Below, piece after piece: positions 2,057 to 64,000 of a stretch of 64,000 nucleotides of DNA. Within the stretch, counting starts at the first letter, position 1. Every line of letters begins with the position of its first letter. The notes beneath the pieces were generated by a model. The model saw only the letters and a program-made list of their open reading frames with translations, did no database searches and was not told the DNA's origin. The stretch comes from Octopus sinensis (lineage: Eukaryota): the NCBI RefSeq assembly GCF_006345805.1, contig NC_043009.1:22940001-23004000 (forward strand). The letters are read 5' to 3'. Both the position numbers and the translations under genes were made by a program.

Positions 2057-3559
2057 CATCATCATCATCATTTAGCGTCCGCTTTCCATGCTAGCATGGG
2101 TTGGACGGTTCAACTGGGGTCTAGGAAGCCAGAAGGCTGCACCAGGCCCAGTCTGATCTGGCAATGTTTCTACGGCTGGATGCCCTTCCTAACGCCAATC
2201 ACTCCGTGAGTGTAGTGGGTGCTTTTTACGTACCACCGGCACAGGTGCCAGGTGGGGCTGCCAAACGGCCACGGACAGATGGTGCTTTTTACGTGCCACT
2301 GACACGGGGGCTAGGCGATGCTGGCAACGGCCACAATCGGATGGCGCTTTTTTACGTCTCACCGGCACGGAGGTCAGTCGGGGCGGTGCTGGCAATGGCC
2401 ACGATCGGATGGTTCGCTTACATTCCACCGGCACTGGTATCACAGCTGCAATTTCCATTGATGTTGATCGACTTCGACTTTGGTTCTGATTTCTGATTTC
2501 CACTTTCCTCAACGGGTCTTCACAAGTGGAGTTTTGTGTCCCAAGAAGGAAAGGTATGCATAAGTGGACTGGCTACATCCCAGGTAGAGGCTACGGGTTA
2601 TGATCTCACTAGTCCTGCCGGGTCTTCTCACGCACAGCATATTTCCATAGGTCTCGGTCTCAGGTCATTTCCTTGGTGAGACCTAAAGTTCGAAGGTCGT
2701 GCTTCACCACCTCGTCCCAGGTTTTCCTGGGTCTACCTCTTCCACAGGTTCCCTCAACCGCTAGGGTGTGGCACTTTTTCACACAACTATCTTCATCCAT
2801 TCTCGTCACATGACCATAACAGCGCAAACGTCTCTCTTGCACATCACAACTGATGCTTCTTAGGTCCAGCTTTTCTCTCAAGGTACTTACACTCTGTCGA
2901 GTATGAACACTGACATTACACATCCATCTGAGCATACTGGCTTCATTTCTTGCGAGCTTACGCATATCCTCAGCAGTCACGGCCCATGTTTCACTACCAT
3001 GTAGCATGGCTGTTCGTACACATGCATCATATAGTCTGCCTTTTACTCTGAGCGAGAGGCCTTTTGTCACCAGCAGGGGTAAGAGCTCTCTGAACTTTGC
3101 CCAAGCTATTCTTACTCTAGCAGTTACACTTTAAGCACACCCAACCCCGCTACTGACTTGGTCACCTAGGTAACGGAAGCTATCAGCTACTTCTAGTTTT
3201 TCTCCCTGGAATGTGGTAGAAGTTGGTCTCTGCACATTTTCAGTGTTTATTGCTCCTGAGAACCTGCCACAAACAAAAACTATCTTCCTAGTTAGCCTTC
3301 CTTTGACATTGCTGCACCTCTTATGTGTCCATAGCTTACACTTGGTGCATCGTATAGTTTCTACCTACACCTTTTCTACAGATCGAGCAGGGCCATCTAT
3401 CTGAAGGCGTTTGTGATTTGTCAACCTTTCTACTTATTAGGACTTTGGTTTTAGCTAGGTTGATTCTAAGGCCCTTCGATTCTAATCCTTGCTTCCACAC
3501 CTGAAACTTTTCCTGCAGTTCTGATCAGTGGTGCTTTTCCTTGGCACGAAACCAAACTG

Positions 3560-3563
<4 letters not shown>
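2057..3563 (-). mobile_element. RTE-clade LINE, 5'-truncated and internally deleted
   Basis: QFGFVPRKSTTD is joined to ELQEKFQVWKQGLESKGLRINLAKTKVL, followed by the RT C-terminus LYDACVRTAMLHGSETWA...RRLRCYGHV...GRGRPRKTW, a 3'UTR with ~45-nt tandem repeats and an (ATG)n tail. Confidence 0.88.
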
Positions 3564-3596
<33 letters not shown>

Positions 3597-3633
3597 CATA
3601 TATATATATATATATATACATATATACATATAC

Positions 3634-3667
<34 letters not shown>

Positions 3668-3692
3668 ATATACATATATATATATATACATA
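3562..3692. repeat. (TA)n/(TACA)n microsatellite running into an assembly gap
   Basis: Direct reading. Confidence 0.9.
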
Positions 3693-3792
3693 NNNNNNNN
3701 NNNNNNNNNNNNNNNNNNNNNNNNNNNNNNNNNNNNNNNNNNNNNNNNNNNNNNNNNNNNNNNNNNNNNNNNNNNNNNNNNNNNNNNNNNNN
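3693..3792. other. Assembly gap (100 N)
   Basis: Exactly 100 Ns, typical of a placeholder scaffold join. Confidence 0.98.
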
Positions 3793-4304
3793 CAAAGCCA
3801 TGTGAGTGTTCTAGTAATTAGAATAGAGAATACATTGGTGTTTATTTGCTATTGTGTAAAGCTGTAGAGAATCCCTAGCAATGTTACATTTAAGCCTGTT
3901 TATTTTAATTGACAAAAAATACCTAAGAAAGGAAGTTTGGATAAACCTCTTTGCCCCTCTCTCTTTCTCTCTCTCTCACATTTACTATTAATGGTTTATG
4001 TAAGGCAGCGGGCTGGCAGAATCGTAACCATGCAGGCCAAAATGCTTAGCATTTCTTTCAGCTTTACGTTCTGTGTTCAAATTCTGCCAATGTCAATTCT
4101 GCCTTTCATCCTTTCAGGGTGGATGAAATAAGCACCAGTTAAGTACTGGGATCAATGGAATTAACTAACTGTTCTTCAAAAATTTCAGGCCTTGTGCGTT
4201 ATTATGGTTTGTTTTTGTTAATGTTAAAGCTTACTTGTGTGTATGTATGTGTGTGTGTCTGTATATATATATATATATATAATGTTTTCTCTTATTTTCT
4301 CCAG

Positions 4305-7300
4305 CAATTTGATTTCCATGCTTTAGAGGAAGCTACTGAATATGATGGTGGGTTTACAAATGACTCTCCTACCATAAGGTTGGTGTAAATGTTTATCAGT
4401 TTGTTTTTTTTCTTCAGGGATGCACGCATACATAAAAAAAAAAAGACTCCGCCGGTTACGACGACGAGGGTCCCAGCTGATACGATCAACGGAACAGCTT
4501 GCTCGTGAAATTAACGTGCAAATGGCTGAGCATTCCACAGACACGTGTACCCTTAACGTAGTTCTCGGGGATAATCAGCGTGACACAGAGAGTGACAAGG
4601 CTGACCCTTTGAAATACAAGTACAACTCATTTTTGCCAGCTGAGTGGACTGGAGCAACGTGAAATAAAGTGTCTTGCTCAAGGACACAACGCGTCGCCGG
4701 GAATCAAACTCACAACCTTACGATCATGAGCCGAATGCCCTAACCACTAAGCCACGCGCCCTCACAACGCATACATACATATATTACATACTTAAGAAGA
4801 TTCCTGTCTGAAGTGGGACTGAACCTGAAACTGGGTGGGAAGCAAATTTCTTAACCACATAGCTGTGTGTGTATGTATGTGTATGATTTGATTTTGATTT
4901 TGATTTTTCCAGTTTCAGCTTATGAGCTGTGGCCATGCTGGGGCACCGCCATTTGGTGTTGCTACTTGGTTTCACTTCATGAAGGCTTTCTAGCAACTGC
5001 TATTTGGTGCATGAGAGAGTTCGATGCAGCTGCCCTCATCTGCCCCTCCTGCCGTGAAGTTGGTTCATCTGGGACACCTGACAGGAAGAGATCCAGCTTC
5101 ATTTTAAAGACATTTGTGTCCAATCCATGCAGGTCTCTCAGGTTCTTCGGGAGGATATTGAAGAGCTGTGGGCCTCGGAAGCCCAGGCTATCACAGAATC
5201 TTGTCCTACATCTTGATGGCAAGTTTGGAGTCCTAGGCACCACGCAGTGGCGCCCAGTTCTGGCGTTTGTGTAACTCTCGATGCCAAAGTTCAGGACACT
5301 TCCCTCCAGGATCTTCCAGATGTATATATGGCTATCTTCCTGCCTACGCTCCAGGGAATATAATTTTAATCTCTTGAGTCTTTCCCAGTAGCTTACATTC
5401 TGCATAGAGGCTATCTTCTTCGTGTAGCTTCGTTGGATCGCCTCAAGTTCTGTGATCAACTTGACACTGGATGGTGACCATAGCTGAGAGCAATAGTCAA
5501 AGTGACTTAGGACAAGTGTCTTCCAGAGGACCATCATGGTTTCTTGTTCTCTTGTTCTAAAGGTTCTAAGAATCCATCCAGCCAGCCGTCTGCATTTCAT
5601 TGTCAGTTTAGCAACATGTACATGAAAGGTCGCGTCATCACTCATGTGAATACCCAGGTCACGCACTGATTGTGCCTCTGGGATTGCAATCCCTCCGGGT
5701 CCAGTGTATTCATTGGGTATTGCATTCAGTTTTGCATGCTGATAGTATAAAGCTTGAAACTTTCCAGCATTGAACTGCATGCTATGTGTAATTGTACATA
5801 TCATTATTTAATGTCTACTTTCCATGCTGGCATGGGTTGGACGGTTTGACTGAGATCTGGAAAGCCAGCAGCTGCACCAGGCTCCATTCTGATCTGGCAA
5901 TATTTCTACAGCTGGATGCCCTTACTAATGCCAACCACTCCAAGAATGTAGTGGGTGCATTTTACATAGCACTGGCACGGGGGCCAGTCGGGGTGTACTG
6001 GCATCGGCCATGTTTGGATGGTGCTTTTTACATGTCACCAGTACGGGAGCCAGCCAGGGGGTACTGGCATTGGCTACATTTGGATTGTGCTTTTTATGTG
6101 CCACTGGCATGAGAGGTAGTCAGGTGGACCCTGGCATCGACCACGTTCAGATGGTGCTTTTTATGTACCACCAGCACGGGGCACTGGCCACAGCTACGAT
6201 TTTGGTTTTGACTTAACAGGTCTTCTCAAGCATATCATATTGACTGATGCATCAGGTGTACTCTTAAGTGGGCTGGACATGCAATGCTGGCATTGGCTGC
6301 GATTTCACTTTAGTTGCTGGGTTTTCTCAATCACAGCATATCTCCAAAGGCCTCGGTCTCCTGTCACTGCCTCTGTGAGGCCTAATTTTTGATGGTCATG
6401 CTTCACCACTTCATCCCATGTCTTCCTGGGTCTACCTCTTCCACAGTTAGTGAGTGACACCTTCTCACACAGCTGTCCTCATCCATACGTAACATATGGC
6501 CATACCAGCACTGTCGTCGCTGTCTTGCACACCACATTTGATGCTTCTTATGCTCAACTATTCTCCCAGGACGCTTATACTCTGTCGTGTATGCACACTG
6601 ACATTACACATCCAGCGGATCATACCAGCTTCATTTCTTTCAAGCCCACGCATGTTCTCAGCAGTCTGGCCGTGTAGCATGGCAGTATCTGTGTGTGTGT
6701 GTGTGTGTTACTGTCTCCTTGCCTTGACATCACATAAGTTACAAACAAGTGTCACTGTCATGAGGGAAATATTACCTTACTTGGAAACAGGTGAGAGTTG
6801 GCAACAAGAAGTGTACCCTGCCTTCAACAAATTGTCTGACCCCATGCAAGTATGGAAAAGTGGACATTAAAAAATGATGAAGAGTAACATATATATACAA
6901 AAATACACACAAAGAATTATAAAAACAAGAGAAACTATATTTTAATTTCCAATATTTTTATTGTTATTATTATTATTATTATTATTCCTATATATATGTA
7001 TTATATATAGAAACCAAGATAAAAATAAAAAAAAATAAGGCATTTCTCTGTTATTGTCTGATGTCTCTCTATCAAGCTTCCTGCTTGGCAAACATGGAAT
7101 GCCGCTGACCAAAGACAAATAGAAAACATTAAACTCTACTGGACTCTTTCAGACTTGACAACAACAGATCATTGCAGACAACACATAAATGATCATGGAG
7201 CATGCATTGGTGGTGGAGGTGGTGGTAGTATTGATGGGGAATGTGATGAGGACAACGACAATTATGATGATTTGAGTGTTGTTGGTTTGGGAATATATAT

Positions 7301-12100: not shown

Positions 12101-15100
12101 TGAGCTTGATATAAATCAACTTTCTGACTCCTTGTGTTCCAATTTTCGGTTGGAGCTAACTGCAGTCAGATCTTTCAAGAAACCCATGAATGTTACAATT
12201 CCTCGTTTGCTCCAATTTCTGCAAAAATCTGTTTTGATGTGTGTGTGTTTGTGTGAAAGAAAAGATATTTCTGTAAGAGGAAAAGAAAATTTAACATTGC
12301 AAAGTGTGTGTGTGTGTTTTGTTAATGATGTCTTTTCTGTTTCTCTGCATCATGTTATGTGGAATACTTCATTAACTCTTTGTCAATCCTGATTCTAAAG
12401 AGCCCTTTTTATTTTTATTTAATGGTTTTTGCCTGTTGCTCTTTTTTTTATTTGACTTGTAATATGCAAATACTCGTTATGACACTCTGATTTCAGTCCT
12501 TAAAAAAAAAACATGACTTTCTCTATCACACACACGTGTGAATTGATGCCTGGCCTAGAGAAGGCAACTGGAACATAATTTCATGTTCCTTTCCTTGAGA
12601 TATTATGACAGTTGTAGCAAGTTATATCCCTAAGTGAATATGCTTTTTTTTTTGTATGATAAATAAAATAAGTAAAAAATTTCTTCTCATTAACTACCGC
12701 CACAGCTACATCAGTGACATTTTCCCCACTGATCATGGATCCACTGCTGCGTCTATGACACCCATCTTTTACTGCTATCATCACCACCACTACTACTACT
12801 GTATAACTTCTATTGCCACTGCCACCACCACCACCACTATTACAACTACAAACCACCACAACTACTTCTACTAACATGTGCAAACTTTCTTATTACATAC
12901 CATGTCCGACAGCTGCTATTAGACTGGAAATGTTGCTGCTTTTGATTCGTGGCAGTGTTAATAATTGAGACGAGGCGGGGTTTCAATAATTACAAACTGA
13001 ACCCACTCCAACTTAGTGGGGCTGTTTTAGTGGGGGTTTCGGGTCGGTTTTTTTTCTTTGCTAATTCTCAACTTCCTTCCTCCCACACAAAATTTCAGAC
13101 TTCATATATATATACATTCATACACAATGGAAAACAGTCAATTTTATTACACATTGTGGCCAGAGACTATGGAATGTTCTACAACCAGATTTTGATGATT
13201 TGCCAATCACAGACCCACATACCCATTTCACTCTGTTACCTTTGGGGAAAGGCATGAACATTGCATTCATTGTAATTATTCCTGGTTTCCAAACTCCTAA
13301 AAATAAAATAAAAATCTCTCTAGTTTCATTTTCTGTCTAAAGATAAATGACAATGTTTTCCCTTTTTTTTTTCTTTTTTTTTTCTTTTGTTAAACTTCCC
13401 ACATGAAGTTAATGTTAATCAGTAAAGTGCCAAACTAGAAGATACTTAATAGTATCTAGCTTGTAGGCCTCATCTTTCTTGAGTTCAAATCTTCTCTCAG
13501 TCTGTATATGTTGAGCATGGAGGCAGGTGTAAGAATCGCTAAAATAAATACTGTTGATAAAATGGAATCGATTCATTTGACTATATTCCTCCAGACCCTA
13601 CCCTCACCCTTTCTCTTGTTTGAACTTGGGGCCCTTTTCCAAAAAAAAAATAGAGGCCGTATGGTATTTTATCTCTATATATATATTGAAATAGTGAATA
13701 TCGAAGACAGAACTTCTTGCAGTTCAAAAAGTGAAAATCAAATAATCATTATAGGTGTAGCTGTATGGTTAAGAAGCTTGCATCCCAACCATGTAGTCCT
13801 GGGTTCAGTCTCACTGTATAGCACCTTTGAAAGTTACTTCTACTATAACCCTAAGCTAATCAAAGCTTTGTGAGTTGAGGTAGTAGATGAAAATTGAAAG
13901 ATGCTTTTTATATGTAGGCGTGGCTGTGTGTTCAGAAGCTTGCTTCCCAATCACATGGTTCCAAGTTCAGTCCCACTGCATGGCACCTGGGCAAGTGTCT
14001 TCTACTATAGCCTTGTGAGTGGATTTGATAGATGCTCATCACACACACACACACACACACATATTTATTCGTGTTTGTCATGCCCGCCATCACTTGACAA
14101 ATGATGCTGGTGTGTTTATGTTCCTGTAACTTAGCAGTTGAGCAAAAGAGACCAATAGAATAAGTACTAGGCTTACAGGGATTGAATTTTTTTTTTACTA
14201 AAATCCTTTAAGGCAGTGCTCCAGCATGGTTACAGTCATATGACTGAAACAAGTAAAGAATATCTGTGTCTTTGTGTTGCATTTGTCCCCCACCACTGAT
14301 TCACAACTGGTGTTGGTGTATTTACATCCCTGTAGCTTAGCAGTTCAGCAAAAGACGCTAATAGAATAAGTACCAGATTTAAAAAAAAAAAATCCTGAGG
14401 TCGTTTTTGCTTAGCTAGACCCTTCAAAGTGGTGCCTCAGCATGGCTGCAGTCTAATGACTGATACAGGAAAAAAATTAAAGATATTTCAGGTTCAAAGA
14501 CCCCATTATCAGAATTGAACAGAGTAAAGAAATGTTAAAAGTTTATGTAGATCTGGCCAATAAGACGTGAAAGTTATAAAACTCCCTCTACCACTTGAAT
14601 TGGTAAAAAAATTCGATTAGGAAAGGGGAATAGTCATGCATGACTGCATCTGCATAAACTTCATTCACTTCTGTTGATTGGCTTTTGTGCTTGAAATGTA
14701 TAAAAGCTACTTTACTTACCTGTTTTGCATTGTAATAATATAAGGTCTCCCATCTTTGTTCTTTATTGTTTCACTTTTGTATCTCAATGCTTTGAGTTAA
14801 ACTACAATGCTCCTTTTTGTACAATATTTCCCCTGCAAACCTCAAGTTTTAACTTCACTGGAAGTGGGGTGCGGGTCGGTCTTATCACTATGAAATTTTG
14901 AATAATCCCCTTCTGTCTGTAACAGAGAGAGTGACCCCCTTTGGTCATGAATGACCATGAGATTGGTCCTTGAAAGTTACCCTTCGAAGTACAAGTCTGG
15001 GCGAGGTTGTTTAAGGAAGACCAGCAGTCACCCATGCATACCAGCGTCCCCTCTCCACACCACCGATGTTATCCAAGGGAAAGGCGAAACACAATACAGC

Positions 15101-21209: not shown

Positions 21210-22820
21210 TGCCAACCACTCCAAGAATGTAGTGGGTGCATTTTACATAGCACTGGCATCGGCCATGTTTGGATGGTGCTTTTTACATGTCACCAGTACG
21301 GGAGCCAGCCAGGGGGTACTGGCATTGGCTACATTTGGATTGTGCTTTTTATGTGCCACTGGCATGAGAGGTAGTCAGGTGGACCCTGGCATCGACCACG
21401 TTCAGATGGTGCTTTTTATGTACCACCAGCACGGGGCACTGGCCACAGCTACGATTTTGGTTTTGACTTAACAGGTCTTCTCAAGCATATCATATTGACT
21501 GATGCATCAGGTGTACTCTTAACTGGGCTGGACATGCAATGCTGGCATTGGCTGCGATTTCACTTTAGTTGCTGGTTTTCTCAATCACAGCATATCTCCA
21601 AAGGCCTCGGTCTCCTGTCACTGCCTCTGTGAGGCCTAATTTTTGATGGTCATGCTTCACCACTTCATCCCATGTCTTCCTGGGTCTACCTCTTCCACAG
21701 TTAGTGAGTGACACCTTCTCACACAGCTGTCCTCATCCATACGTAACATATGGCCATACCAGCACTGTCGTCGCTGTCTTGCACACCACATTTGATGCTT
21801 CTTATGCTCAACTATTCTCCCAGGACGCTTATACTCTGTCGTGTATGCACACTGACATTACACATCCAGCGGATCATACCAGCTTCATTTCTTTCAAGCC
21901 CACGCATGTTCTCAGCAGTCTGGCCGTGTAGCATGGCAGTATCTGTGTGTGTGTGTGTGTGTTACTGTCTCCTTGCCTTGACATCACATAAGTTACAAAC
22001 AAGTGTCACTGTCATGAGGGAAATATTACCTTACTTGGAAACAGGTGAGAGTTGGCAACAAGAAGTGTACCCTGCCTTCAACAAATTGTCTGACCCCATG
22101 CAAGTATGGAAAAGTGGACATTAAAAAATGATGAAGAGTAACATATATATACAAAAATACACACAAAGAATTATAAAAACAAGAGAAACTATATTTTAAT
22201 TTCCAATATTTTTATTGTTATTATTATTATTATTATTATTCCTATATATATGTATTATATATAGAAACCAAGATAAAAATAAAAAAAAATAAGGCATTTC
22301 TCTGTTATTGTCTGATGTCTCTCTATCAAGCTTCCTGCTTGGCAAACATGGAATGCCGCTGACCAAAGACAAATAGAAAACATTAAACTCTACTGGACTC
22401 TTTCAGACTTGACAACAACAGATCATTGCAGACAACACATAAATGATCATGGAGCATGCATTGGTGGTGGAGGTGGTGGTAGTATTGATGGGGAATGTGA
22501 TGAGGACAACGACAATTATGATGATTTGAGTGTTGTTGGTTTGGGAATATATATCTTGCCTCAGCTCCAGTCAGCTTTACTTAAATACTAAAATAGCAAT
22601 ATGTAAGGGGAAAGAAAACAAATATTTATTGGATTTTTTTTAAAGCTTATTTAAGGGTTAGGCATGTTTTGATAAAAGAAAAAATTCTCTGACATTATGT
22701 ACATATATATAAATATATATTGTAACCATGTTGGTTTGGGTTCAGTCCCACTGTGCAGCACCTTGGGCAAGTGTCTTCTATTATAGCCCCAGGAAAACCA
22801 ATGCCTAATGAGTAAATTTG
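21210..22820. repeat. 1.6-kb near-identical direct duplication, copy B (downstream of the SMARCA5 3' end)
   Basis: Partner of 5929-7565, offset about 15,255 bp. Confidence 0.93.
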
Positions 22821-24982: not shown

Positions 24983-53091
<28,109 letters not shown>

Positions 53092-55490
53092 CTGCAAAAT
53101 AAAATAGAATAAAATGAAATGAAAGGCATAAAACGCAGCACTCCCTAGGTATGAAATTTTCTTATGATCAAGACAACAAAACACAGAAATAATAATAATA
53201 AAGACACACACAATATTTCTGACAAAGTATTTTTATGGAAAGTCAGCCAACATATGCAATAATTAAGTTAGTGTTAACATATTTAATGCAGGTATCACTG
53301 GTTGGCATAGAAAAATAGAATTCTCTAGAATATGAAAAAAAAAAAAAACTCTCAGAGACGCCATCTGCATGAAAAGATAACAGTTAAATTAGTGTTAACA
53401 TATTTAATGCAGGGAGCATTAAAATGTTAACTCGAAGTTAATATTTTTTAAAGTATATTTTCAACTAAATGTTAATAATTTCTTCATTTGCCCTAACTCT
53501 TACTTATTAATGCACATGTCCATTTATCTCAGAATGGAAAATTTCTTCAAAAAAAGTAGGATTGATTCGAAGGACACTTGGCTGCTATTTCTAGCAGGTT
53601 TGAATGACAACATACAGGACCCCTCATTTGCCTACTACATATCTTACTTTACCAAAGAAAAAATAATTTTGTAACTCACAATAAAATTGTCGTTTAACCC
53701 AGGTCAGCTCTCACAGCAACTCTATGATCAAACCTGTTCTACCCATAACCAACCCTATCTTTCTCTTTCTGGTACAGTGTACATAAGACTACATTCTTCT
53801 AATTTTTCACAATGGTGGCCCTTTATAGCCATGGGCCCTAACTCCAACTCCCCATCTAAACTGAAAAGTCCTTGTATAGCAGGCTTGTGGGTGCTGGTGC
53901 AATGCATCTGTGCCATGCATAAAGCACCTGGGCTGGTGCCATGTAAAGAGCACTCAGTACACTCTGTAAAGTGTTTGGCATTAGGAAGGGTATCCAGTCA
54001 TAGAAGCCATGCCAAAACACCTAATTGGAGTGTGGGCAGTTCCTGTCAATCCGCCTGCATGGAGAGCACATGTTAAATGATGATGATGATGTGGGGAAAT
54101 TTGGCTGCTAGTTTTAGAAGAATGTGCAGCTTCAGCTTCCACATTGGTTCACTAATAAGGTTGAGCTTACAAACATGTAGAGCAGCATGCAATTTAAATA
54201 GCTTTTCTGGAACCTATGACTAATAAGGTGAGCTATGGTAAAGACACAAGAATGGTTGTGAGGTTAAGAAGTTCACTTCACAATTACAGTTTCAGGTTCA
54301 GTTTCACTGCATGGCACTCTGGGCAGGTATCTTTGATAACCCCTGGCTTAAAAATGAATTGTGAGTAGAATCAATAATGAAAGAGGCACAGGGAGAAAGA
54401 GAGGGATAAAATCTGCATGGAAGCCCATCATATACACATCAGTGCTAATGCTTACATTCACTGACACCATCATATAAAAATCACTTGAGCAAAAGTGTAG
54501 CTGTCATATTGACAATTCTATCGACTAATCACCTTGAAGCTGAGTAAATCCTTTACTCGTAAAACAGTCAAGGGTTAGCAACAGGGAAAGCATTCAGCTT
54601 TAAAACAATGTGTCTACAAATTGTCTTTGCCCAACATATGCTAGCATGGTATAAAAAAAAAATGGATGTTAAAAGAGCAAACATGATACTATGAAGTCAG
54701 TTTTAAAACTGGCATTAAAACCTGTGAGGGTGATCAGTTTGTCCCTTCAGGTGTCTTGTGTAATAAAGTCATGAAATCCAAGTAGAATCATTCATTAATT
54801 TGCAAGCCAAAGAGGAAGAGTCTGCATGGTTGCTTGACCCACTAGACATAGCAGCCAAAAATATCCTATAATCCATTTCTTACCACCACTGGATAAAGTG
54901 GATCAGTGTACAATATTCCTGGAAAAAACATAGACACAGGATGGTTAAGACTGTTCCAGGTTTTGACCACAGGCCTGTTCAATCAAAGCTGATTTGAGAC
55001 TAAACAGCAACAACGATTCTTTGATTTGTAATGAATATACAAGATTTTCACCTAATAGAGTAAGTGACAGATTCTTGATTCTTTTGACCACAAGGCTAAC
55101 ATTATTTTGTGAGACAAATTAGCTTTACAGCAATCATCCTACTTCAGTATATTACTGCTACTTATTTCACATTGTGCTGAAGAGACAAAAGTCAAACTTA
55201 GAGCAGTATAGTTCTGAATTAGACACAGCTAAACTAGAACTACTGTCCACAGCCTCCACATCTCCACTGTATGATAATGATGATAATACCTACTAACATC
55301 AGAGGGGAGAGAACAATCACTTAAAGCAAAGTTGAGCCCAGCAGGAATATGAACTCGGAACGTAATAATGATAATTGAATAAATTATAAATAAATCTCAT
55401 ATTTTCTAATAGAAACTAGTTGACAAACAGCTTACAGTTAACATTTTACACACACACACACATACATACATATATGTATGTATAAACACA

Positions 55491-56602
55491 TACAGGGTCC
55501 AGCATAGAAATCTGACAACATACAAATGTTAGTAAATAGATTATCAACTTTATTGTCTGAATGTACAAAACAATGGGTGCCATTTACAAGCATATAAACA
55601 ACACCTAAGTAACTATTCATGAGTCCTTAAAATTGCTTCAAATTTTGGCACTGGGCTAGCAATTTGAGGGAAAGGGATTGGTTGATTATATTGATGACCC
55701 TGAAAGGATGAAGGGCAAAGCAGACTTTGCGTAGGACTTAGTCTTTAGAATATTGCCAACCAAACATTTTCCCATTCTTCTGCAAGCATACACTGTAGTC
55801 AGGTATTTATTGCATCATGTAATGAGGTTTTGCCTCAAATAGCAGCTTTCAATATGTGAGGAATATTGAACATTTTCCTTTTGTGGCAGCTCATCACAAA
55901 CAGAAGTATCAGATAACTGAGCAGGCAGGCTATATGTCATTGCCTTGCGAAATGACATGGTCAGAAAACATTTCTTCAATAATGTCCATAGAAGCTCTTG
56001 CTGCATGGGTGTGTGCTTCATCTTGTAGAAACTTTGCATGTTGTGTATTAATGCCACGTTTATTCAATTTTGGGGAAAAGAAGATGCACAATTTGACACA
56101 ACACAATGATGAGAATTCAGTTACAATGTATCTGCTCTCTTGAAAGAGACATCAGTCTTTCACACTAATGTTTACGTCACAGCACCACACTGTTACACAT
56201 TCATTCACAGTGAAGGCAACACTCATGAAGTTACTGTGGACTGCTGTGTTACTAGTAGCATATATTTTGCCCATTTATGCCACCTAACAGCTAGAAAGGT
56301 ACTTTACTGCTCATGAGAAATATTTTCTGCAAACTTTTTCTGGCTTCCCCCAATCATATGGATTCATTTTTTTTTTGCATAATTTATACTCCTATGAATA
56401 AGAGAATTTAATTCAAGGTACAATATTATTTGCACATTATTATCTGAATTACACAGTATAGAGACACGTTTTGTTGCAGAATAACAAGAATTGTTTGCAG
56501 CCCTCTTAATAGCCTTAATATTCTTCAGTATTTCATTTGCACACTCCCTAACAACATTTGAAAATTTAAAACTATCAAAATTCCCTGCTGGATCATGTGT
56601 GT
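55491..56602 (-). mobile_element. Decayed Tc1/mariner-superfamily DNA transposon
   Basis: 56031-55930 translates as FLQDEAHTHAARASMDIIEEMFSDHVISQGNDI*, matching the FQQDGAxAHTAR...WPxxSPDL transposase region. Degenerate TIRs TACAGGGTCCAGCATAGAAATCTGA and its complement near 56578-56600 (17/23 match). Confidence 0.7.
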
Positions 56603-57798
56603 ATGTATTTAAACATAATAATATCCATACACACACACAAGCATGTGTAGACATAAGTGTACACACACACACACGCATATATACATACATACACAAACAC
56701 ACACTATGACATGACAACTTACACATTCAATAAAAACTACATGCAAGATAATTGTTGTGAGAATATATATATATATTTTCACACATATACATATATAGAT
56801 AGAGAAGTACAAGAACAAAGATTAAATTGTTAATGAAATGCAATGTAACACAATAATAATGCTAACCAAAATAAAATTTTGGAAATCTGAAAAATTAGTA
56901 AAAACGAAAAACAAAAATAAAAATGGGCGAAAGAAAGAATGCAGGAAAGAAAACTACACACAGAATTTGGCAGAAAAATAAACAATGCCATGGAAGCATG
57001 CAAAATGGTAAATCCTGTTGCAACCAAAAGTGGTCTGACAACAACAGTCAACAGTCTTTCAATCAGCAAAAGCTAGAATTCAAAACCAAAATGAAAGTTT
57101 ATAGCGTAAGGAGTGAGACGCTGTGCTGAAGCGTACTCTTCCAACCCATGCTAGCATGGAAAATAGCAGATGTAAAAATGATAATTTGTTTTCAAAAACA
57201 CTAAGACTAACACCATACATGTTTGTGTTTGTGTGTGTATATATATATATACGAGTGCACATGCACACCAGCCTGCACAGAGACAAAAGTTCTCTCTCAC
57301 ACACAACAGGCAGTCCACAGCATACATTGGACTATTAGTGTCACATTCTTTGACCACTAGACATACTTTAGTTATAAACCTTATACACACTATTACAACT
57401 CAGAAATTTCAGGAGTACAGAATAAGTGGTACTATACTACATGGCCTTAGACTTAGCAATTATCTCAGGTACTATGAAAAGCTTAAGTGAACAACAAATG
57501 TACACACAATCCAGCAAAGTATATTCTTTGACTTCGGTCTGTCTTGTACTTCTATATTAAAAAATAAATAAAATAAAATAAAATAATAATTGCTTCCATA
57601 TGAATTAATGATCTTAAAATCTGATGTTATATATATATAAGATCATTAATCTGTTGAGAAGGAGAATAAATTCATGAAGGTAGTGTAGCATCAACTGCAA
57701 TAAAGTTGCCATTAAGAATATTTGATGATGGAAGTTCCGATTTCATTCTATTTTGTTTTTGTTTTTGGCATTTTTTTTTTGGGACAAGGTTTACTCAC

Positions 57799-57849
57799 TC
57801 ATCTGCTGGGTCATCTGTTTTTACACCACCAGTCGTTGGTTTCTTTTCA
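57799..57849 (-). CDS. SMARCA5: Candidate 51-nt symmetric micro-exon of SMARCA5 (copy 1), encodes (D)EKKPTTGGVKTDDPAD
   Basis: Acceptor tttctttctatgacag, donor gtgagtaa, 1+48+2 nt (phase 2-2), no stop. The terminal GA plus the first C of exon 53091 gives GAC = D of DHRHRR. Confidence 0.78.
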
Positions 57850-58455
57850 CTGTCATAGAAAGAAATATTTTGCATTACAAACAAAACATTGGAAAAGTGG
57901 CAGGAACAAAGATCTAGTACAAATAAATATGGAAGCATAAAAAAAAAAAAAATTAATAATTCATGCCTACCGAGATAATTGTCAAGGATGTAAAGAATTG
58001 GATGTTGAACAATTGATTCCAGCTTTTTGATGTATAAGAATTGGTAATTAGTAAAAGATAGAACACAATAGAAGTGACTACATATATATATATATATATA
58101 TATTTATTAAAAAATGTATATAATAGAGAAAGAGAGAAAGAGTTGCAGTAATTTAAATTACTGCAGGGATTAAGAAACTGCATTAACTATATATTAGCTA
58201 AGAAAACATTGTACCTTTTTAGTAACTATACTGAAAATACTCATATCTATGACAACACTGCAGTGGTTAATGGACTTACTCACTGTATATGGAATGATAA
58301 CACCACTACTGTTGTAGGTAAACTGTATTAGCCATACGTATAAATGTGACAATACTGTTGTTATTGCAAATGTTGTGAAATTGTACTGACCAACTATGGA
58401 ACTATCACAATACTGCAGAAGTAGGTGAATTGTATTGACCATATACAGAACTCAT

Positions 58456-58508
58456 TCTTCACCTGAGGCTTCTGATTTTACTCTAGCAGTCTCTGTGCTT
58501 CTTTTCCA
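58456..58508 (-). pseudogene. Degenerate copy of the micro-exon (pseudo-exon, copy 2)
   Basis: Alignable to the intact copies (gaaaagaag...gtaaaatcagaagcc...gaaga), but the acceptor AG reads TG, the donor GT reads AT (atgagt), the length is 53 nt and there is an in-frame stop. Confidence 0.7.
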
Positions 58509-59165
58509 CAATCATGAGAAATAACTATTTCTATTTTACAATCAAGAAAAGATTTCAAAAGCAAAACTTATGAAAGTTGAATAATTGAGCCTGGTTTTTG
58601 ATGATTAAGAGTGGGTCACATTGGAAAGATAGAGCTAAGACAGAAATCATGGAATAACCAAATATATACAATATAGACACAGTTCTTTATAAATAAGATT
58701 AGTAAAGCATGGTTGACTAAAGAGGAAACTTTAGTAAAACTCTCCCCCATTCCCAATCAAAGAAAAAAAAATGTACAACTAAACCACTAAGACAATATCT
58801 ATACATTGTTACGTTGCATGAAAGTGACTTTAGAAATTGGCACTAAAAGAAAGAATTGTGGAGAAAAGTAGTAGGTGATAAAGTAACTTTATGTAAAAGT
58901 CACACACTGCAGAGAAGGGTTGCAATGAAATGACCAGAAAAATATGAGACAACAGCATTAGAATGAGTGGTATAAAGAGACACAACATTGACCATAGATG
59001 TTACCGACAACACTGAAGTGGTATAGAAACTGTACTGACCACATAGAGAACCTACGATAACATCACTGCAATGGTAGGTGAACTGCATTGAGCATATACA
59101 GATGCAGAACTACCACAACACTGCAGTGATAGGGAAAACTGTATGGGACCATACATGGCACTTAC

Positions 59166-59216
59166 TCTTCTTCTGGGGCATCTGATTTTACACCATCAGC
59201 GTTGGGTTTCTTTTCA
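59166..59216 (-). CDS. SMARCA5: Candidate 51-nt symmetric micro-exon of SMARCA5 (copy 3), encodes (D)EKKPNADGVKSDAPEE
   Basis: Same acceptor tttctttctatgacag, donor gtaagt, phase 2-2, open frame. Confidence 0.75.
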
Positions 59217-60095
59217 CTGTCATAGAAAGAAATATTTTCTATTTTATAAACAAAACATTCATTTCAAATGTAAACAACAAAGATCTATCACAAACAAACA
59301 TGGAAACATTCACTTTTTAAAATTTTGTTTTTTCTCAATACATACACATACATAACATGTCTTGCATATATCTGCTGAGTTTGTAAAGAAATGACAGCTG
59401 AATGAACAACTGATTCTAGCTTTTGATATAATTAAGGTCATTAGTAAAAAAAAAAATAAAAAGATAAAAATGATGAGAAACACAATCGATATAACCTAAT
59501 CAATACAAATAAAAAAAAAAGATGAGCTTTTTTTAATTATAATAAAGACAACTATGACTATATAGAAAACTAGAAAAATTAATCCTTCCTCCATAAAAAA
59601 AAAAAACAAATAAATAAAGCAGTGAAATAAGACAGGATAAAAAGACTTTAGAAAATGATGTTCAAAAGGTAGAACTATAGAGAAAAGCACTGAACGATAA
59701 AATGACTTCATACAAAGCCAAACACTATGGAGAAGGGTTGTGATGAAATGACCAGAAATTTGGGACAGCAGCACTGGAATGATTTATGTAGGAGAAATAT
59801 GGAGCTAGTACTTTTCTACAGTGGAAGGTGAACTGTACTGACCACACATGTGACTAAGACAACATTACAATGACAGGTGAGCTGTACTGATTATATATGT
59901 AACTATGACAACTAAATTCACCATATATGGAATGATGAAAACAACACTGTATTTGTCGAAAATACTATACAATTCATACATGGGAACTGTATAGATCACA
60001 CTGCAGTGGTTGGTGGGGACTCCACTGACCATATATACAACTAGGACAACACTGCAGTAATAGGGAAACTGTATGGGACCATACATAGCACTTAC

Positions 60096-60146
60096 TCTTC
60101 TTCTGGGGCATCTGATTTTACAGCATCAGCCTTTGGTTTCTTTTCA
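60096..60146 (-). CDS. SMARCA5: Candidate 51-nt symmetric micro-exon of SMARCA5 (copy 4), encodes EKKPKADAVKSDAPEE
   Basis: Same acceptor tttctttctatgacag, donor gtaagt, phase 2-2, open frame; 3 nt different from copy 3. Confidence 0.75.
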
Positions 60147-61019
60147 CTGTCATAGAAAGAAATATTTTCTATTTTATAAATGAAACATTTAAAATGAAAA
60201 CTTCGGAATGTGGGAACAACAAAGATCTACTACAGACACATAAACATTATCTTTTTCCAGTACATACACGTACACACACATCTTGTGACACATCTGCCAA
60301 GCATATAAAGAACTGGAAGTTGAACAATTTATGTCAGTCATTGATGTGTTGGTCTCATGAATTACAAGAGAGAGAGGCATGACACATGAGAGAAATGACC
60401 AAATATATACACACAGTTGTTTAAATCACTATAAAGGAGTTGCAGGAAATATGTATTAACTAAACACAGAACAATGACAGCAATGCATTGATTGGGTGGG
60501 GAACTTTACTGATTGTACATAAAATCACACAACACAAAAGTGACTACAGAAATGAGTATATTCAACTCTATAAAAATCACTTCCAACAATACATAACAGA
60601 AATATTTATACAATTAACACCATTACTCAAGCAGGTTTTGAACTAAAGTTTCTGCAAATTAAGAGTCCATCACACCAATCTCAAAGACCAAGTTTCATTA
60701 CTCTCTCATTTCACTATGTTTGGTCAGAGGAATAAATGATCTTTTAGAAAAATAGAAAATCCAAATGGAGATATATAAACATGTTACACATCAAAATTCA
60801 CATTTTGCTTGTATTTTTTCTACATAATCATCTCTCTCTTTATTTTTTGGTAGAATGTTTTTCTGTGTCCTTTCTTAAATTTAGCATATATGTGTATATA
60901 GACTAATGTCGAAATCTTACAAAACAAATTTAAATATTCATGTCAAATGTTAGCGTAAATAAATGATGGGCCACAAATGAGTAGGTTATAAAGATCAGCT
61001 GCAGGAGGGAAGACTGCAC

Positions 61020-61170
61020 TTGCATGGTCATATTGGTATATGATCTACATTATCCAATGATGGTAAGGAATGGAAGACAACAATTGAATAAAAAAGTGAT
61101 ATACAATCCAAGTAGGGGAATCCTAGAGAAGAGGAAGACCAAAGAAGGCATGGGAGGAAATGATGATGGC
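61020..61170 (+). mobile_element. Old RTE LINE 3' remnant
   Basis: AGAGGAAGACCAAAGAAGGCATGG = RGRPKKAW, the RTE C-terminal motif, followed by (ATG)n. Confidence 0.5.
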
Positions 61171-64000
61171 TGTTCTCAGAATGCTTAACCCAAGAAAAGA
61201 GGTAACAGAAGACTGCAAATAGTGGCAAGATGGTCTTCTGGAGATGACCCATCAAATCTATACAAGAATGGAATAATAAACGATGATGATAATAATAATC
61301 AGAAGTCGATCAGCTGAGATAGTTTACAGCTCTTGTATTCATTATGTTTTCCATGTTCTGGCATAAAAAAAAATTACAGACTCCACTTGAACCAAATGTT
61401 ATGGTTTTCTTCTAAACACAAGGTCTAACCACAATGAAAAGTACACCAAGAATGGGTTTAAGAGATGGATTTAGGAACATTGTAAAAGTGAAGTCCAAAG
61501 AGAAGCAGTTTTCAGTGTCTGCAACAGAATTGATAATGACATAAAAATATAGGTCATTAAATGATGAGAGACTTACATCTGAGAGCTGTTAGACCAGCAT
61601 GATTTTTTTCATTAAAGATAATAACATTTTGATACAGAGCAAGACAAAACTACTTGAGAAGAGTTTTAACATTTTAGATTACTCTGTCAAATGTAATGCT
61701 TACTTATTCGTATTGTTTTGAATTAATCATGCATTATCTTGTAGCTTTGACATTTTGATGATGGAATTGTTTAGTTTTAAAATAACATTGAAGGGTAGGT
61801 GTGAGAGGCCAGATCTGGCTGGTTTAAATACTAAAGGGTTAAGTGAATTTAAAGGAAATATTTTAAAAGCCAAGTACCCTTGCTTACACAAACTACTCAA
61901 CCATGAAGGTTATTATTTTTTTCAGAAGACTGGATGAAACAACATTCCTCAGCAAAAAATGTAGATGTAAAAGATAACAATAAGAATGGAACCAAGATTA
62001 AAAGACATTTCAGATGGTATTTAAATTTACTTTCTTTGAAAATCAGCAAAACTTCTTCATTGTATCAAAAATCTTAATTTCAACCTCAGAGGCTCATTAA
62101 GCATTTCGTCTCACTGTCTGAACAGCACAGCAGTCTTTCTTAACATGTATTTAATGAGAGGAAAAAAAATGCAAGATTGGATTTGAGTTCATTTTCTTCA
62201 GGTCTTTAGACAAAAGCTGACCATTCAGTCACTGCAAGTGGACTGCACATAAAAGTTTTAATTCTGTATTTGGTTTAATTACATTTTTTTTTTACCCAAA
62301 ATGGAAGAGAATTCATGCTTTATCAAAAGCCTAGGCAACATGCATGCATTCAAAAGTTAATAGCTATAAAACAACAAATTAACTATTAATAGCAATGATA
62401 ATCTTTTTTAACTTAGCACAAGGCTGCCACACATTTTGGTGGGATAGAAATACTTGACCGATACTTTATTTTAACTGACCCTAGAAGAATGACAGATAAT
62501 GTCAACTTTGGCAGGATTTGAACTCAAAACATAAAGGAGCTAAATTAATTACTACATGGCATTTTGTCAAGAGGAAACAGTCTTGACTGTCAGGCATTTC
62601 CTAAAGACTGTACAGTGGTTCAGAGCTATATTTGAAACAATCACAATCTGAATTTGGTGAACTGTTCTATGAATACACTAAAATATCCCAACATGAATAA
62701 TAATAAAAATGACAACTAAAATTAAAAAACAAAATATGCAATTCGTAAGTATTTTTCTGTGGAGGAGTCTAGCTTTCACCAGAAAAGTAATAAATACACA
62801 CAATTCACAATTTTGTTTCTTTCAACCCCAATAACAATGATCAAATACAAAAACAAACTTTTCATTGAAAAACACTTGAAAAGAGCCCCCCCCCCCCAAG
62901 TCTGAAATTTTTGAAAAGTCTTATGCAGAAAAAACAAAAAAAAAAATAAAACTATTCAAACCATGTTAGCTACAGGATCCTTAACTGCTGGGCTAATATA
63001 TTTTCATTTTAAATAAACTGTTTGATGATCTGCCCAAACAAGTTGGCTAGCCTATTAATGCTCGAACTACTTCAGTAACAAGACAACAAAAGAAAAGCTA
63101 CAATGAGGTTATTCAACCTACTAAAGTTAGCACCAAAATTTCCCTCAAATTATCTTCCTACTATATTCACAAATTGAGAATAGAGAGTAAAAGAGAGGAC
63201 GGTTATAGCTGGAATACCAATGATCGTAGGCTTGCCTGTTCAGTGCTGACTTGGGCTAAACGATGTTTAGTTCATTTGAACATATTATGTGATGTAGTTC
63301 CAAAGCCAACTCTAGGACTTTATGCAGTTCGCTGCCTTATAGATCAGACAGTCTTGTCAGATGGAGATGAAGAAACTGCATTGATATCAGGCTGCAAGCA
63401 GCAAAGTAAATACTAGCTTCACTACAAGCAAATGTCCATCCAGATGATAAAGTGATGAACACAGCCAAGATATACATAAATACATATAAGTGCACACATG
63501 TATCTTAAAAACTGATACATGGTGGAGGTCATGCTTCTGTCCAGGTGGATAACTTTTCTGTTACCTGTGACCCGATAAAATGTACCCAGTTAATGATGTA
63601 AAGTGGTTGGCGTTAGGAAGGGTGTCCAGCCATTAAAAACCATGACATAAACCTTGACAGAGATTGGTAATGTTGTCGAGTTATTCAGGTAATGAAAGAC
63701 TTTGAAAAATGGCAAGATGCTGTGTTGAAACAGACACATTCAATCCAAACTAACATGGAAAGAAATCAGATATACACATTCATACTTTTATATATAGACA
63801 CCAAGTATTTGATTAAACTCATGACTATACAATTCATTAACTTTTTTTTTTGCCACCTAAATTTTTCATCTTTTCAAACCTAGAACAATCCAGTCTTTGA
63901 TCATGTTCCTGCTGCCACGTTTAATGGAAATATCATTTAAGATAGTTTTGGCTCATATTTTCCACAATAGTCTATGAATGATGACAAAAGAGCAAACAAA

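What the first reader, a model, noticed from the sequence alone, without database searches (positions are those of the whole stretch)
57799..60146. Tandem array of symmetric 51-nt micro-exons that would insert 17-aa Lys/acidic repeats directly before the ISWI AutoN motif
Seen: three 51-nt segments on the SMARCA5 strand (60146-60096, 59216-59166, 57849-57799). Each has the acceptor TTTCTTTCTATGACAG, a canonical GT(A/G)AGT donor, phase 2 at both ends and no stop. The next SMARCA5 exon (53091) needs a phase-2 upstream intron, so any subset splices in frame, giving ...[66 protein letters not shown]. All are too short for the ORF track. Established: the (D)HRHR(K/R) basic patch and following acidic stretch form AutoN, the H4-tail-mimicking autoinhibitory element of ISWI ATPases. 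As I recall, fly and human ISWI have only a short unrepeated linker here. Inference: exon duplication built a modular cassette, and including 0-3 repeats by alternative splicing could tune AutoN inhibition or H4-tail dependence, perhaps by tissue. The short pyrimidine tracts fit regulated inclusion.
Basis: partly seen in the sequence, partly recalled or inferred. Interest (0 to 1): 0.88.

Follow-up and report, generated by a model that had tools for sequence, protein, structure and literature searches.

The report
Triplicated 51-nt candidate exons in ISWI gene
An intron of a chromatin-remodelling (ISWI/SMARCA5) gene holds three tandem copies of a 51-base exon-like segment that would lengthen a floppy linker just before the enzyme's self-inhibiting motif; the sequence is real and its splice signal looks constrained, but whether it is expressed or has any function could not be tested here.

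Summary
On the minus strand, 60146-60096, 59216-59166 and 57849-57799 are 51-nt segments with an identical acceptor, GT(A/G)AGT donors, phase 2-2 and open frames. Any subset splices in frame to the AutoN exon (53091-52991) of an ISWI/SMARCA5 orthologue and regenerates the Asp before HRHRR.

It has no AG, an AT donor, 53 nt and an in-frame stop.

The 35 nt across the acceptor (-22..+13) are identical in the three intact copies. Flanks are 42-63% identical and the dead copy is 55% identical in the 22 nt upstream. That indicates constraint on a splice signal, or gene conversion.

There is no sign of protein-level selection: 8 of 8 A-D differences are nonsynonymous. The acceptor is weak.

In other animals the same phase-2 intron separates the ppHSA/AT-hook exon from AutoN and carries no such exons. 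The peptide has no homologue in the protein databases. Some insect ISWIs nevertheless carry long Lys/acidic linkers at this position.

Expression, alternative use and any effect on AutoN could not be tested. No cephalopod transcripts were reachable, and the upstream exon lies outside the window.

Best reading: lineage-specific tandemly duplicated cassette exons, a known kind. Interest is moderate.

The parts
60096..60146 (-). Candidate micro-exon A, 51 nt, phase 2-2, encodes (D)EKKPKADAVKSDAPEE(D). Acceptor ...TTTCTTTCTATGACAG|T, donor AGA|GTAAGT.
   Evidence: Acceptor PWM 4.8 bits, donor 8.0 bits.
59166..59216 (-). Candidate micro-exon B, 51 nt, phase 2-2, encodes EKKPNADGVKSDAPEE. 94% identical to A.
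58456..58508 (-). Decayed fourth copy (pseudo-exon C): TG instead of AG, donor ATGAGT, 53 nt through a 2-nt insertion, in-frame stop. Serves as an internal picture of neutral decay.
   Evidence: (family D5).
57799..57849 (-). Candidate micro-exon D, 51 nt, phase 2-2, encodes EKKPTTGGVKTDDPAD, donor TGA|GTGAGT. Homology to the other units stops right after the donor.
   Evidence: Donor PWM 2.8 bits, below the range of the gene's real donors.
60147..60168 (-). 22-nt block upstream of exon A (AAAATATTTCTTTCTATGACAG). Identical copies lie at 59217-59238 and 57850-57871. With the first 13 exon bases it forms a 35-nt block invariant in A, B and D.
57793..60350 (-). Local tandem duplication array of four units in the order A-B-C-D. 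Start-to-start spacings are 930, about 710 and about 660 nt. The array also contains a ~53-nt minisatellite found only here.
52991..53091 (-). ISWI exon carrying AutoN and AcidicN: (D)[33 protein letters not shown]. The acceptor leaves one base (C) to complete the Asp codon.
24983..53091 (-). In-window body of the ISWI/SMARCA5 orthologue: 20 exons from AutoN to the stop codon. Domains are SNF2 ATPase, Helicase_C and HAND-SANT-SLIDE.

Best explanation
These are lineage-specific, tandemly duplicated cassette exons of the ISWI gene.

Shown: a segment of about 0.7-1.4 kb carrying one 51-nt symmetric (phase 2-2) exon was copied at least three times. The copies sit inside the ancient phase-2 intron that separates the ppHSA/AT-hook exon from the AutoN exon. 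Three copies keep their splice signals and one has decayed.

Inferred: when spliced in, each copy adds 17 residues (Asp-Glu-Lys-Lys-Pro, then a variable Ala/Gly/Thr/Lys stretch, then an acidic end). Each unit has net charge -2 to -3 and probably has no fixed structure. It sits directly in front of Asp-His-Arg-His-Arg-Arg. Every copy starts with T and ends with GA, so any combination keeps the frame and rebuilds the conserved Asp.

Inferred: the identical weak acceptor and the invariant purine-rich exon start (GAAAAGAAACC) suggest enhancer-dependent recognition. That fits optional rather than constitutive inclusion. The likely protein effect is a longer, more acidic tether between the ppHSA/AT-hook part and the AutoN-AcidicN part of the N-terminal regulatory region. 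Whether this changes autoinhibition is speculation.
For: Anatomy and frame:
- Searches give the sequence, frame and concatenated translation.
- The gene is ISWI: Pfam finds SNF2-rel_dom, Helicase_C, HAND and SLIDE. The best PDB match is human SMARCA5 8v4y_W, aligned from VGDYRHRR.

Differential conservation:
- Positions -22..-1 are 100% identical in A, B and D.
- Neighbouring flanks are 42-63% identical.
- Exon bodies are 82-94% identical.
- The dead copy C is 55% identical in the acceptor block.
- In a neutral simulation at the exon's own divergence, an unchanged 35-nt block has P of about 2e-3 to 5e-5.

Exon-like properties:
- GC of the segments is 41-43%, like the real exons (41%) and unlike the surrounding intron (34%).
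- A/B donors score mid-range among the gene's real donors. No other candidate exon passes in 10.9 kb.

Conserved host intron:
- Same position and phase in L001, L003 and a vertebrate locus L009.
- Many genomic fragments start at '..S|HRHR'.
- The site tolerates variable linkers in other animals.
Against: - No transcript or annotation evidence of any kind could be reached.
- The acceptor is weak: 4.8 bits, in the low part of the real range of 1.7-18.1, with T at +1.
- A and B have a competing AG at -24/-23.
- The donor of D scores below all real donors.
- Retention of AG, GT and an open frame alone is not unusual (P of about 0.23-0.33).
- All 8 A-D exon differences are nonsynonymous. Their chemistry is not significantly biased (P of about 0.1-0.15), so protein-level selection is not shown.
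- The three copies share their features by descent. Short-tract gene conversion could produce the invariant block.
- The peptide has no homologue in 5.8 billion or 1.84 billion proteins. This is weak evidence, because those sets also seem to lack cephalopod ISWI.
Confidence: 0.55

Rival explanations
1. Unexpressed intronic duplicates (pseudo-exons). One exon-like piece, perhaps a partial copy of the 3' end of the upstream exon with its GA|GTAAGT donor, was amplified in the intron. Phase, GA end, donor and the junction AG are all shared by descent and none is used by the spliceosome. The invariant block reflects gene conversion or recency.
For: - Features shared by descent are not independent.
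- One copy has already decayed.
- The acceptor is weak and D's donor is poor.
- There is no synonymous excess.
- The ancestral upstream exon ends GGAGA|GTAAGT in L001, L003 and L009, like the micro-exon donor.
- No protein in any database carries the peptide.
Against: - The sharp conservation peak sits exactly on the acceptor and first 13 exon bases in a copy (D) whose flanks are 42-63% identical and whose exon body is 16-18% diverged.
- D kept frame, length and donor while C lost all of them.
- GC is exon-like.
Confidence: 0.28
2. Real exons that are constitutive. All three, or a fixed subset, are always included, so this lineage simply has an ISWI with a 17-51 residue longer linker. There is no regulated isoform choice and no special role in AutoN control.
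For: - The linker before AutoN varies freely in length and composition among animals. Long Lys/Asp/Glu-rich versions occur in insect fragments P0024, P0029, P0049 and P0009.
- The symmetric phase lets all copies coexist.
- There is no protein-level constraint.
Against: Weak acceptors, short exons flanked by 0.9-4.7 kb introns and a poor donor on D are more typical of optional exons. No data settle this.
Confidence: 0.2
3. A mutually exclusive exon cluster. Exactly one of A, B or D is chosen per transcript, giving three alternative 17-residue linkers.
For: - Tandem exon duplicates are often mutually exclusive (PMC9013439).
- A 12-mer upstream of the cluster (60760-60749) is complementary to the sequence at -29..-18 of exons A and B.
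Against: - Including two or three copies keeps the frame (51 = 3 x 17).
- Introns of 879 and 1316 nt rule out steric exclusion.
- All sites are U2-type GT-AG.
- The candidate docking duplexes are AU-rich and rank only at the 6-9% level among background windows. D has none.
Confidence: 0.08
4. The segments belong to another transcript (a nested gene or non-coding RNA) rather than to ISWI.
For: None found. This cannot be excluded without transcript data.
Against: - Phase and terminal GA fit the ISWI intron exactly.
- No other coding signal lies on either strand in 53.1-64 kb.
- There are no Rfam or tRNA hits.
Confidence: 0.03

Closest known systems
Tandem exon duplication giving duplicated cassette exons (Letunic, Copley and Bork 2002, cited from memory; Ivanov and Pervouchine 2022, PMC9013439)
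   Same: Adjacent homologous copies of one exon with its flanking intron, with equal length and phase and retained splice sites. Such duplicates are often unannotated and found by similarity within introns.
   Different: No annotated parent exon is visible in the window, and expression is unproven. The copies are symmetric, so they can be used additively rather than as substitutes.
Mutually exclusive exon clusters (Dscam1, 14-3-3zeta, tropomyosin; PMC9013439, PMC6071210)
   Same: Origin by tandem duplication. The copies differ in the middle of the encoded peptide.
   Different: No frame, steric or spliceosome incompatibility enforces exclusivity. There is no convincing docking/selector pairing.
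ISWI N-terminal regulatory region: ppHSA, AT-hook, AutoN, AcidicN (Clapier and Cairns 2012, cited from memory; Ludwigsen et al. 2017, PMC5305211)
   Same: AutoN (HRHRR) and AcidicN ([10 protein letters not shown]) are fully conserved at 53091. The insertion point is the poorly conserved stretch after the AT-hook.
   Different: No described ISWI has a 17-residue unit repeated up to three times, encoded by separate exons, between AT-hook and AutoN. In L001, L003 and vertebrates about 9-11 residues (DEKxKLxxxG) fill this gap.
SNF2L/SMARCA1 splice isoforms (+exon 13, alternative exon 1, exon 24/25; PMC2266716)
   Same: Precedent that alternative splicing changes the activity or localisation of an ISWI ATPase.
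   Different: Those events lie in the ATPase domain, the extreme N-terminus or the NLS. They are not before AutoN and are not tandem duplicates.
Neural microexons dependent on the eMIC domain of Srrm (PMC8797185)
   Same: Short symmetric exons with weak recognition signals that insert a few surface or disordered residues.
   Different: At 51 nt these are longer than the typical 27 nt or less. There is no UGC close to the 3' splice site in A or B, and the AG-exclusion zone is short (AG at -24/-23).
Insect (hymenopteran-like) ISWI fragments with long Lys/Asp/Glu linkers (P0024, P0029, P0049, P0009)
   Same: A low-complexity Lys/acidic stretch of 20-40 residues immediately before DHRHSK.
   Different: The sequence is unrelated. 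The exon structure of these insect linkers was not examined, and there is no 17-residue periodic unit.

Membership tests
ISWI (SMARCA5/SNF2H-type) remodeller gene, as host | SNF2 ATPase plus C-terminal HAND-SANT-SLIDE | tested here: met
   SNF2-rel_dom 3e-109, Helicase_C, HAND, SLIDE, Myb-like; best solved relative is human SMARCA5.
ISWI (SMARCA5/SNF2H-type) remodeller gene, as host | AutoN basic patch followed by AcidicN | tested here: met
   [16 protein letters not shown] aligns to human [16 protein letters not shown].
ISWI (SMARCA5/SNF2H-type) remodeller gene, as host | ppHSA motif and AT-hook upstream of AutoN | not testable with these tools
   No such exon lies in 53092-64000. It must lie beyond the window end.
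Tandemly duplicated exons | Adjacent homologous copies with the same length and phase | tested here: met
   A-B 94%, A-D 84%, all 51 nt, phase 2-2.
Tandemly duplicated exons | Functional splice sites retained | tested here: met
   AG and GT(A/G)AGT are present in all three. The acceptor is weak and D's donor is weak.
Tandemly duplicated exons | Presence in mature mRNA | not testable with these tools
   No transcript data are available. The protein databases hold no cephalopod ISWI.
Mutually exclusive exon cluster | Joint inclusion is prevented by frame shift/NMD, steric hindrance or incompatible spliceosomes | tested here: not met
   51 nt is a multiple of 3. Introns are 879 and 1316 nt. All sites are GT-AG.
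Mutually exclusive exon cluster | Docking site and selector sequences forming competing RNA duplexes | tested here: inconclusive
   There is a 12-nt AU-rich complement. Duplex energies of -15.6 and -17.1 kcal/mol rank only at 6-9% of background, and D has none.
eMIC/Srrm-dependent neural microexons | Length of 27 nt or less, UGC near the 3' splice site, long AG-exclusion zone | tested here: not met
   Length is 51 nt. There is no TGC within 30 nt upstream in A or B. An AG lies at -24/-23. Criteria are from PMC8797185.

The most novel reading that the evidence does not exclude
The three exons are used combinatorially (0-3 copies) in a tissue- or stage-specific way. The resulting change in tether length and negative charge next to AutoN measurably shifts ISWI autoinhibition and H4-tail dependence. 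This would be a splicing-controlled rheostat on a remodeller that is otherwise almost invariant across animals.
Probability: 0.07. Interest if true: 0.7.

Novelty: new member of a known kind. Interest (0 to 1): 0.35.

Why it matters
ISWI's N-terminal regulatory region is among the most conserved parts of the enzyme, and how AutoN and AcidicN restrain the motor is still debated. One view is a pseudosubstrate; another is docking on lobe 2 next to the H4-tail site (PMC5305211).

A natural set of isoforms differing only in the length and charge of the tether before AutoN would give a ready-made series for testing how that tether matters. It would also be a clean example of new coding exons born inside an ancient, phase-conserved intron.

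If the segments are not expressed, the case is an ordinary intronic duplication. It would then be a caution that exon-like features shared by descent should not be counted three times.

Tried and rejected
1. Protein search with the repeats plus AutoN gave only short ISWI fragments from other animals, none with the repeat.
2. The repeat-only search found nothing.
3. A search with a lineage-specific HAND exon found only two fragments. The database therefore lacks cephalopod ISWI, and the negative result in item 2 says little.
4. The one close relative, ENA contig L002 (about 80% nucleotide identity in exons), could be read only 10 kb upstream of the HAND exon. That does not reach the AutoN intron.
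A profile of the three in-window ORF translations (A2) hit only P0123, an unrelated protein with four FKPNGDALKSDDPF repeats. I rejected this as chance.
6. Exact look-ups of three window ORFs, intended to find the species or extend the window, returned nothing on record.
7. The metagenome scan returned 51 AutoN-exon loci and no repeat.
8. The docking/selector hypothesis for exclusive splicing was not supported.
9. Tests for protein-level selection were not significant.
10. Literature searches for the peptide and for octopus plus SMARCA5 found nothing.
11. Rfam and tRNA scans of the window were empty.
12. Pfam on suspected transposon ORFs gave no hits.

Full report
OBSERVATION

On the minus strand the three segments 60146-60096 (A), 59216-59166 (B) and 57849-57799 (D) are each 51 nt. 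Each is preceded by ...AAAATATTTCTTTCTATGACAG and followed by GTAAGT (A, B) or GTGAGT (D). The 28-mer spanning acceptor and exon start occurs exactly three times in the window, against 0 expected.

Each segment starts with the third base of a codon (T) and ends with two bases (GA). The encoded peptides are EKKPKADAVKSDAPEE, EKKPNADGVKSDAPEE and EKKPTTGGVKTDDPAD. The next exon begins at 53091 as cag|C CAT CGT CAC CGA CGT. Any subset therefore reads through in frame, and every junction rebuilds Asp (GA+T or GA+C) before [15 protein letters not shown].

HOST GENE

A tblastn with human SMARCA5 (sequence recalled from memory) lays out 20 exons from 53091 down to a stop at 24983. Two database searches confirm this independently:

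- Pfam finds SNF2-rel_dom, Helicase_C, HAND, SLIDE and a Myb-like SANT domain.
- The best solved relative is human SMARCA5 8v4y_W, aligned from VGDYRHRR onward. The repeats remain unmatched.

The exon with ppHSA and AT-hook is not in the window. The 5' partner of the putative exons is therefore unseen. I could not verify that the organism is an octopus.

The stretch of about 57793-60350 is a tandem duplication of four units, not three. The extra copy, C (58508-58456), lies between B and D and is dead:

- TG replaces the acceptor AG.
- The donor is ATGAGT.
- A 2-nt insertion makes it 53 nt.
- The frame hits a stop.

C shows what neutral decay looks like at this locus. Units A, B and C also share a ~53-nt minisatellite downstream of the exon. 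It carries the palindrome CACTGCAGTG and occurs nowhere else in the window. Homology of D to the other units stops right after its donor.

IS THERE CONSTRAINT?

In alignment A1, identity varies sharply by region:

| Region | Identity among A, B and D |
|---|---|
| 22 nt before the exon | 100% |
| Adjacent upstream flanks | 42-63% |
| Exon bodies | 82-94% |

Copy C is 55% identical to the intact copies in the 22-nt acceptor block. The invariant block runs from -22 to +13 and so includes the purine-rich exon start GAAAAGAAACC.

A neutral simulation at the exon's own divergence (16-21%) gives P of about 0.23-0.33 for merely keeping AG, GT and an open frame. That is not remarkable. It gives P of about 2e-3 to 5e-5 for an unchanged 35-nt block. 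The segments have exon-like GC (41-43%, against 41% for real exons and 34% for the surrounding intron). This is the signature expected of a used splice acceptor with an exonic enhancer. Short-tract gene conversion is the alternative.

Protein-level selection is not visible. All 8 A-D differences and 2 of 3 A-B differences are nonsynonymous. The bias toward small or polar residues is not significant (P of about 0.1-0.15).

SPLICE-SITE QUALITY

I built position weight matrices from the gene's own 19 donors and 20 acceptors:

| Site | Score (bits) | Range of the gene's real sites (bits) |
|---|---|---|
| Shared acceptor | 4.8 | 1.7-18.1 |
| Donors of A and B | 8.0 | 4.3-10.6 |
| Donor of D | 2.8 | 4.3-10.6 |

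A and B also carry an upstream AG at -24/-23. Weak sites on a 51-nt exon flanked by introns of 879, 1316 and 4707 nt fit optional use. They also fit non-use.

COMPARISON WITH OTHER ANIMALS

Genomic loci L001, L003 and a vertebrate locus L009 show the ancestral layout. One exon encodes ppHSA, AT-hook and KKDEKxKLxxxG and ends in GGAGA|GTAAGT. A phase-2 intron follows, and then ag|C CAY CGN encodes (D)HRHR.

Many database fragments begin with intron-encoded junk followed by S|HRHR, which shows the same acceptor. The 1.1-1.5 kb introns of L001 and L003 contain nothing like the micro-exons. None of 36 metagenome loci or about 70 N-terminal fragments carries an EKKP-type repeat.

The linker is, however, variable. 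Several insect fragments have 20-40 residue Lys/Asp/Glu-rich stretches just before DHRHSK (P0024, P0029, P0049, P0009). A long Lys/acidic linker at this position is therefore tolerated and is not unique. What is unusual here is its encoding by tandem symmetric exons.

The micro-exon donor (GA|GTAAGTG) and its start ((D)EKK) resemble the 3' end of the ancestral upstream exon (KKDEK...GA|GTAAGT). This suggests origin by partial duplication of that exon. It is only a lead, because this species' own upstream exon is not available.

SEARCHES FOR EXPRESSION OR HOMOLOGUES

The repeat peptide has no match among 5.8 billion proteins. A profile of the in-window translations found only an unrelated repeat protein among 1.84 billion representatives. 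These negatives are weak, because a lineage-specific ISWI exon also retrieved only two fragments.

The one close relative (L002, about 80% exon identity) could not be read far enough upstream. Exact look-ups of window ORFs and literature searches found nothing.

MECHANISM

The best-supported reading is a set of lineage-specific tandemly duplicated cassette exons (confidence 0.55 that at least one is spliced into ISWI mRNA). Each would add a 17-residue, net acidic (-2 to -3), proline-containing spacer. The spacer would sit between the AT-hook and AutoN-AcidicN. Those motifs dock on ATPase lobe 2 next to the H4-tail site (PMC5305211).

Shown: the anatomy, the frame compatibility, the duplication history and the constraint on the acceptor block. 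Inferred: splicing, optional inclusion and any effect on autoinhibition.

Mutually exclusive use is unlikely. Joint inclusion keeps the frame, the introns are long, and a candidate docking/selector pairing is no better than 6-9% of background windows and is absent for D. The main rival (0.28) is that these are unexpressed pseudo-exons whose exon-like features are shared by descent.

VERDICT

The phenomenon, tandem exon duplication creating candidate cassette exons, is well known (PMC9013439). The location before AutoN gives it some interest for ISWI biology. I rate interest at 0.35 and file it as a new member of a known kind.

Noticed in passing
window 58456-58508 (-): Fourth, decayed copy of the micro-exon: no AG, AT donor, 2-nt insertion, in-frame stop. 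It is useful as a neutral control.
   Followed up: yes
window about 58250-58450, 58990-59160 and 59800-60095 (-): A ~53-nt minisatellite (consensus about TATGGTCAGTACAGTTCACCTACCACTGCAGTGTTGTC, with the 10-bp palindrome CACTGCAGTG) follows exons A, B and pseudo-exon C. It occurs nowhere else in the 64 kb. Copies could pair with each other in the pre-mRNA; the effect on splicing is unknown.
   Followed up: partly
window 60749-60760 (-) versus 60164-60175 and 59234-59245 (+): The 12-mer AUUUUCUAUUUU about 600 nt upstream of exon A is exactly complementary to the sequence at -29..-18 of exons A and B (3 occurrences against 0.11 expected). Duplex energies are not outliers and D lacks it, so it is probably chance.
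   Followed up: yes
window 60169-60170 and 59239-59240 (-): Exons A and B have a competing AG at -24/-23 upstream of the proposed acceptor, while D has GC there. Use of that AG would give a 73-nt, frame-breaking exon.
   Followed up: no
L001:240-290, L003:2100-2125, L009:600-615: The exon upstream of AutoN ends GGAGA|GTAAGT in three distant animals, including a vertebrate. The micro-exons end GA|GTAAGT / GA|GTGAGT and start (D)EKK, like the ancestral KKDEK. This hints that the array arose by partial duplication of that exon's 3' end.
   Followed up: partly
proteins P0024, P0029, P0049, P0009: Some insect ISWI fragments carry 20-40 residue Lys/Asp/Glu-rich low-complexity linkers immediately before DHRHSK (for example DKLEKADKTEKSDKEDKTAKE and KPDAKPEPDAKPDKPD). 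They sit at the same position as the putative insertion here.
   Followed up: partly
window 48481-48606 (-): The 126-nt intron inside ATPase lobe 1 is a multiple of three and free of stops, so ORF 48304-48744 reads straight through it. Retention would insert 42 residues in frame.
   Followed up: no
window, e.g. 43804-43952, 46985-47131, 51527-51677, 52374-52513, 26606-26745, 13760-13900: A ~150-nt dispersed repeat, SINE-like by its size and number, has at least 17 copies in both orientations in introns and flanking DNA. None lies in the micro-exon array. There are no tRNA or Rfam hits.
   Followed up: partly
window 2660-3070 (-), 4977-5804 (-), 55815-56150 (-): ORFs that look, from memory, like C-terminal parts of retrotransposon ORF2 and like a mariner-type transposase remnant (FLQDEAHTHAA). 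Pfam gave no hit for any of them, so these labels are unconfirmed.
   Followed up: partly
window 6496-6870 (+) and 21750-22124 (+); also 3466-3867: Two identical 124-residue ORFs lie 15 kb apart, which indicates a recent segmental duplicate or repeat. A run of N (assembly gap) lies within 3466-3867.
   Followed up: no
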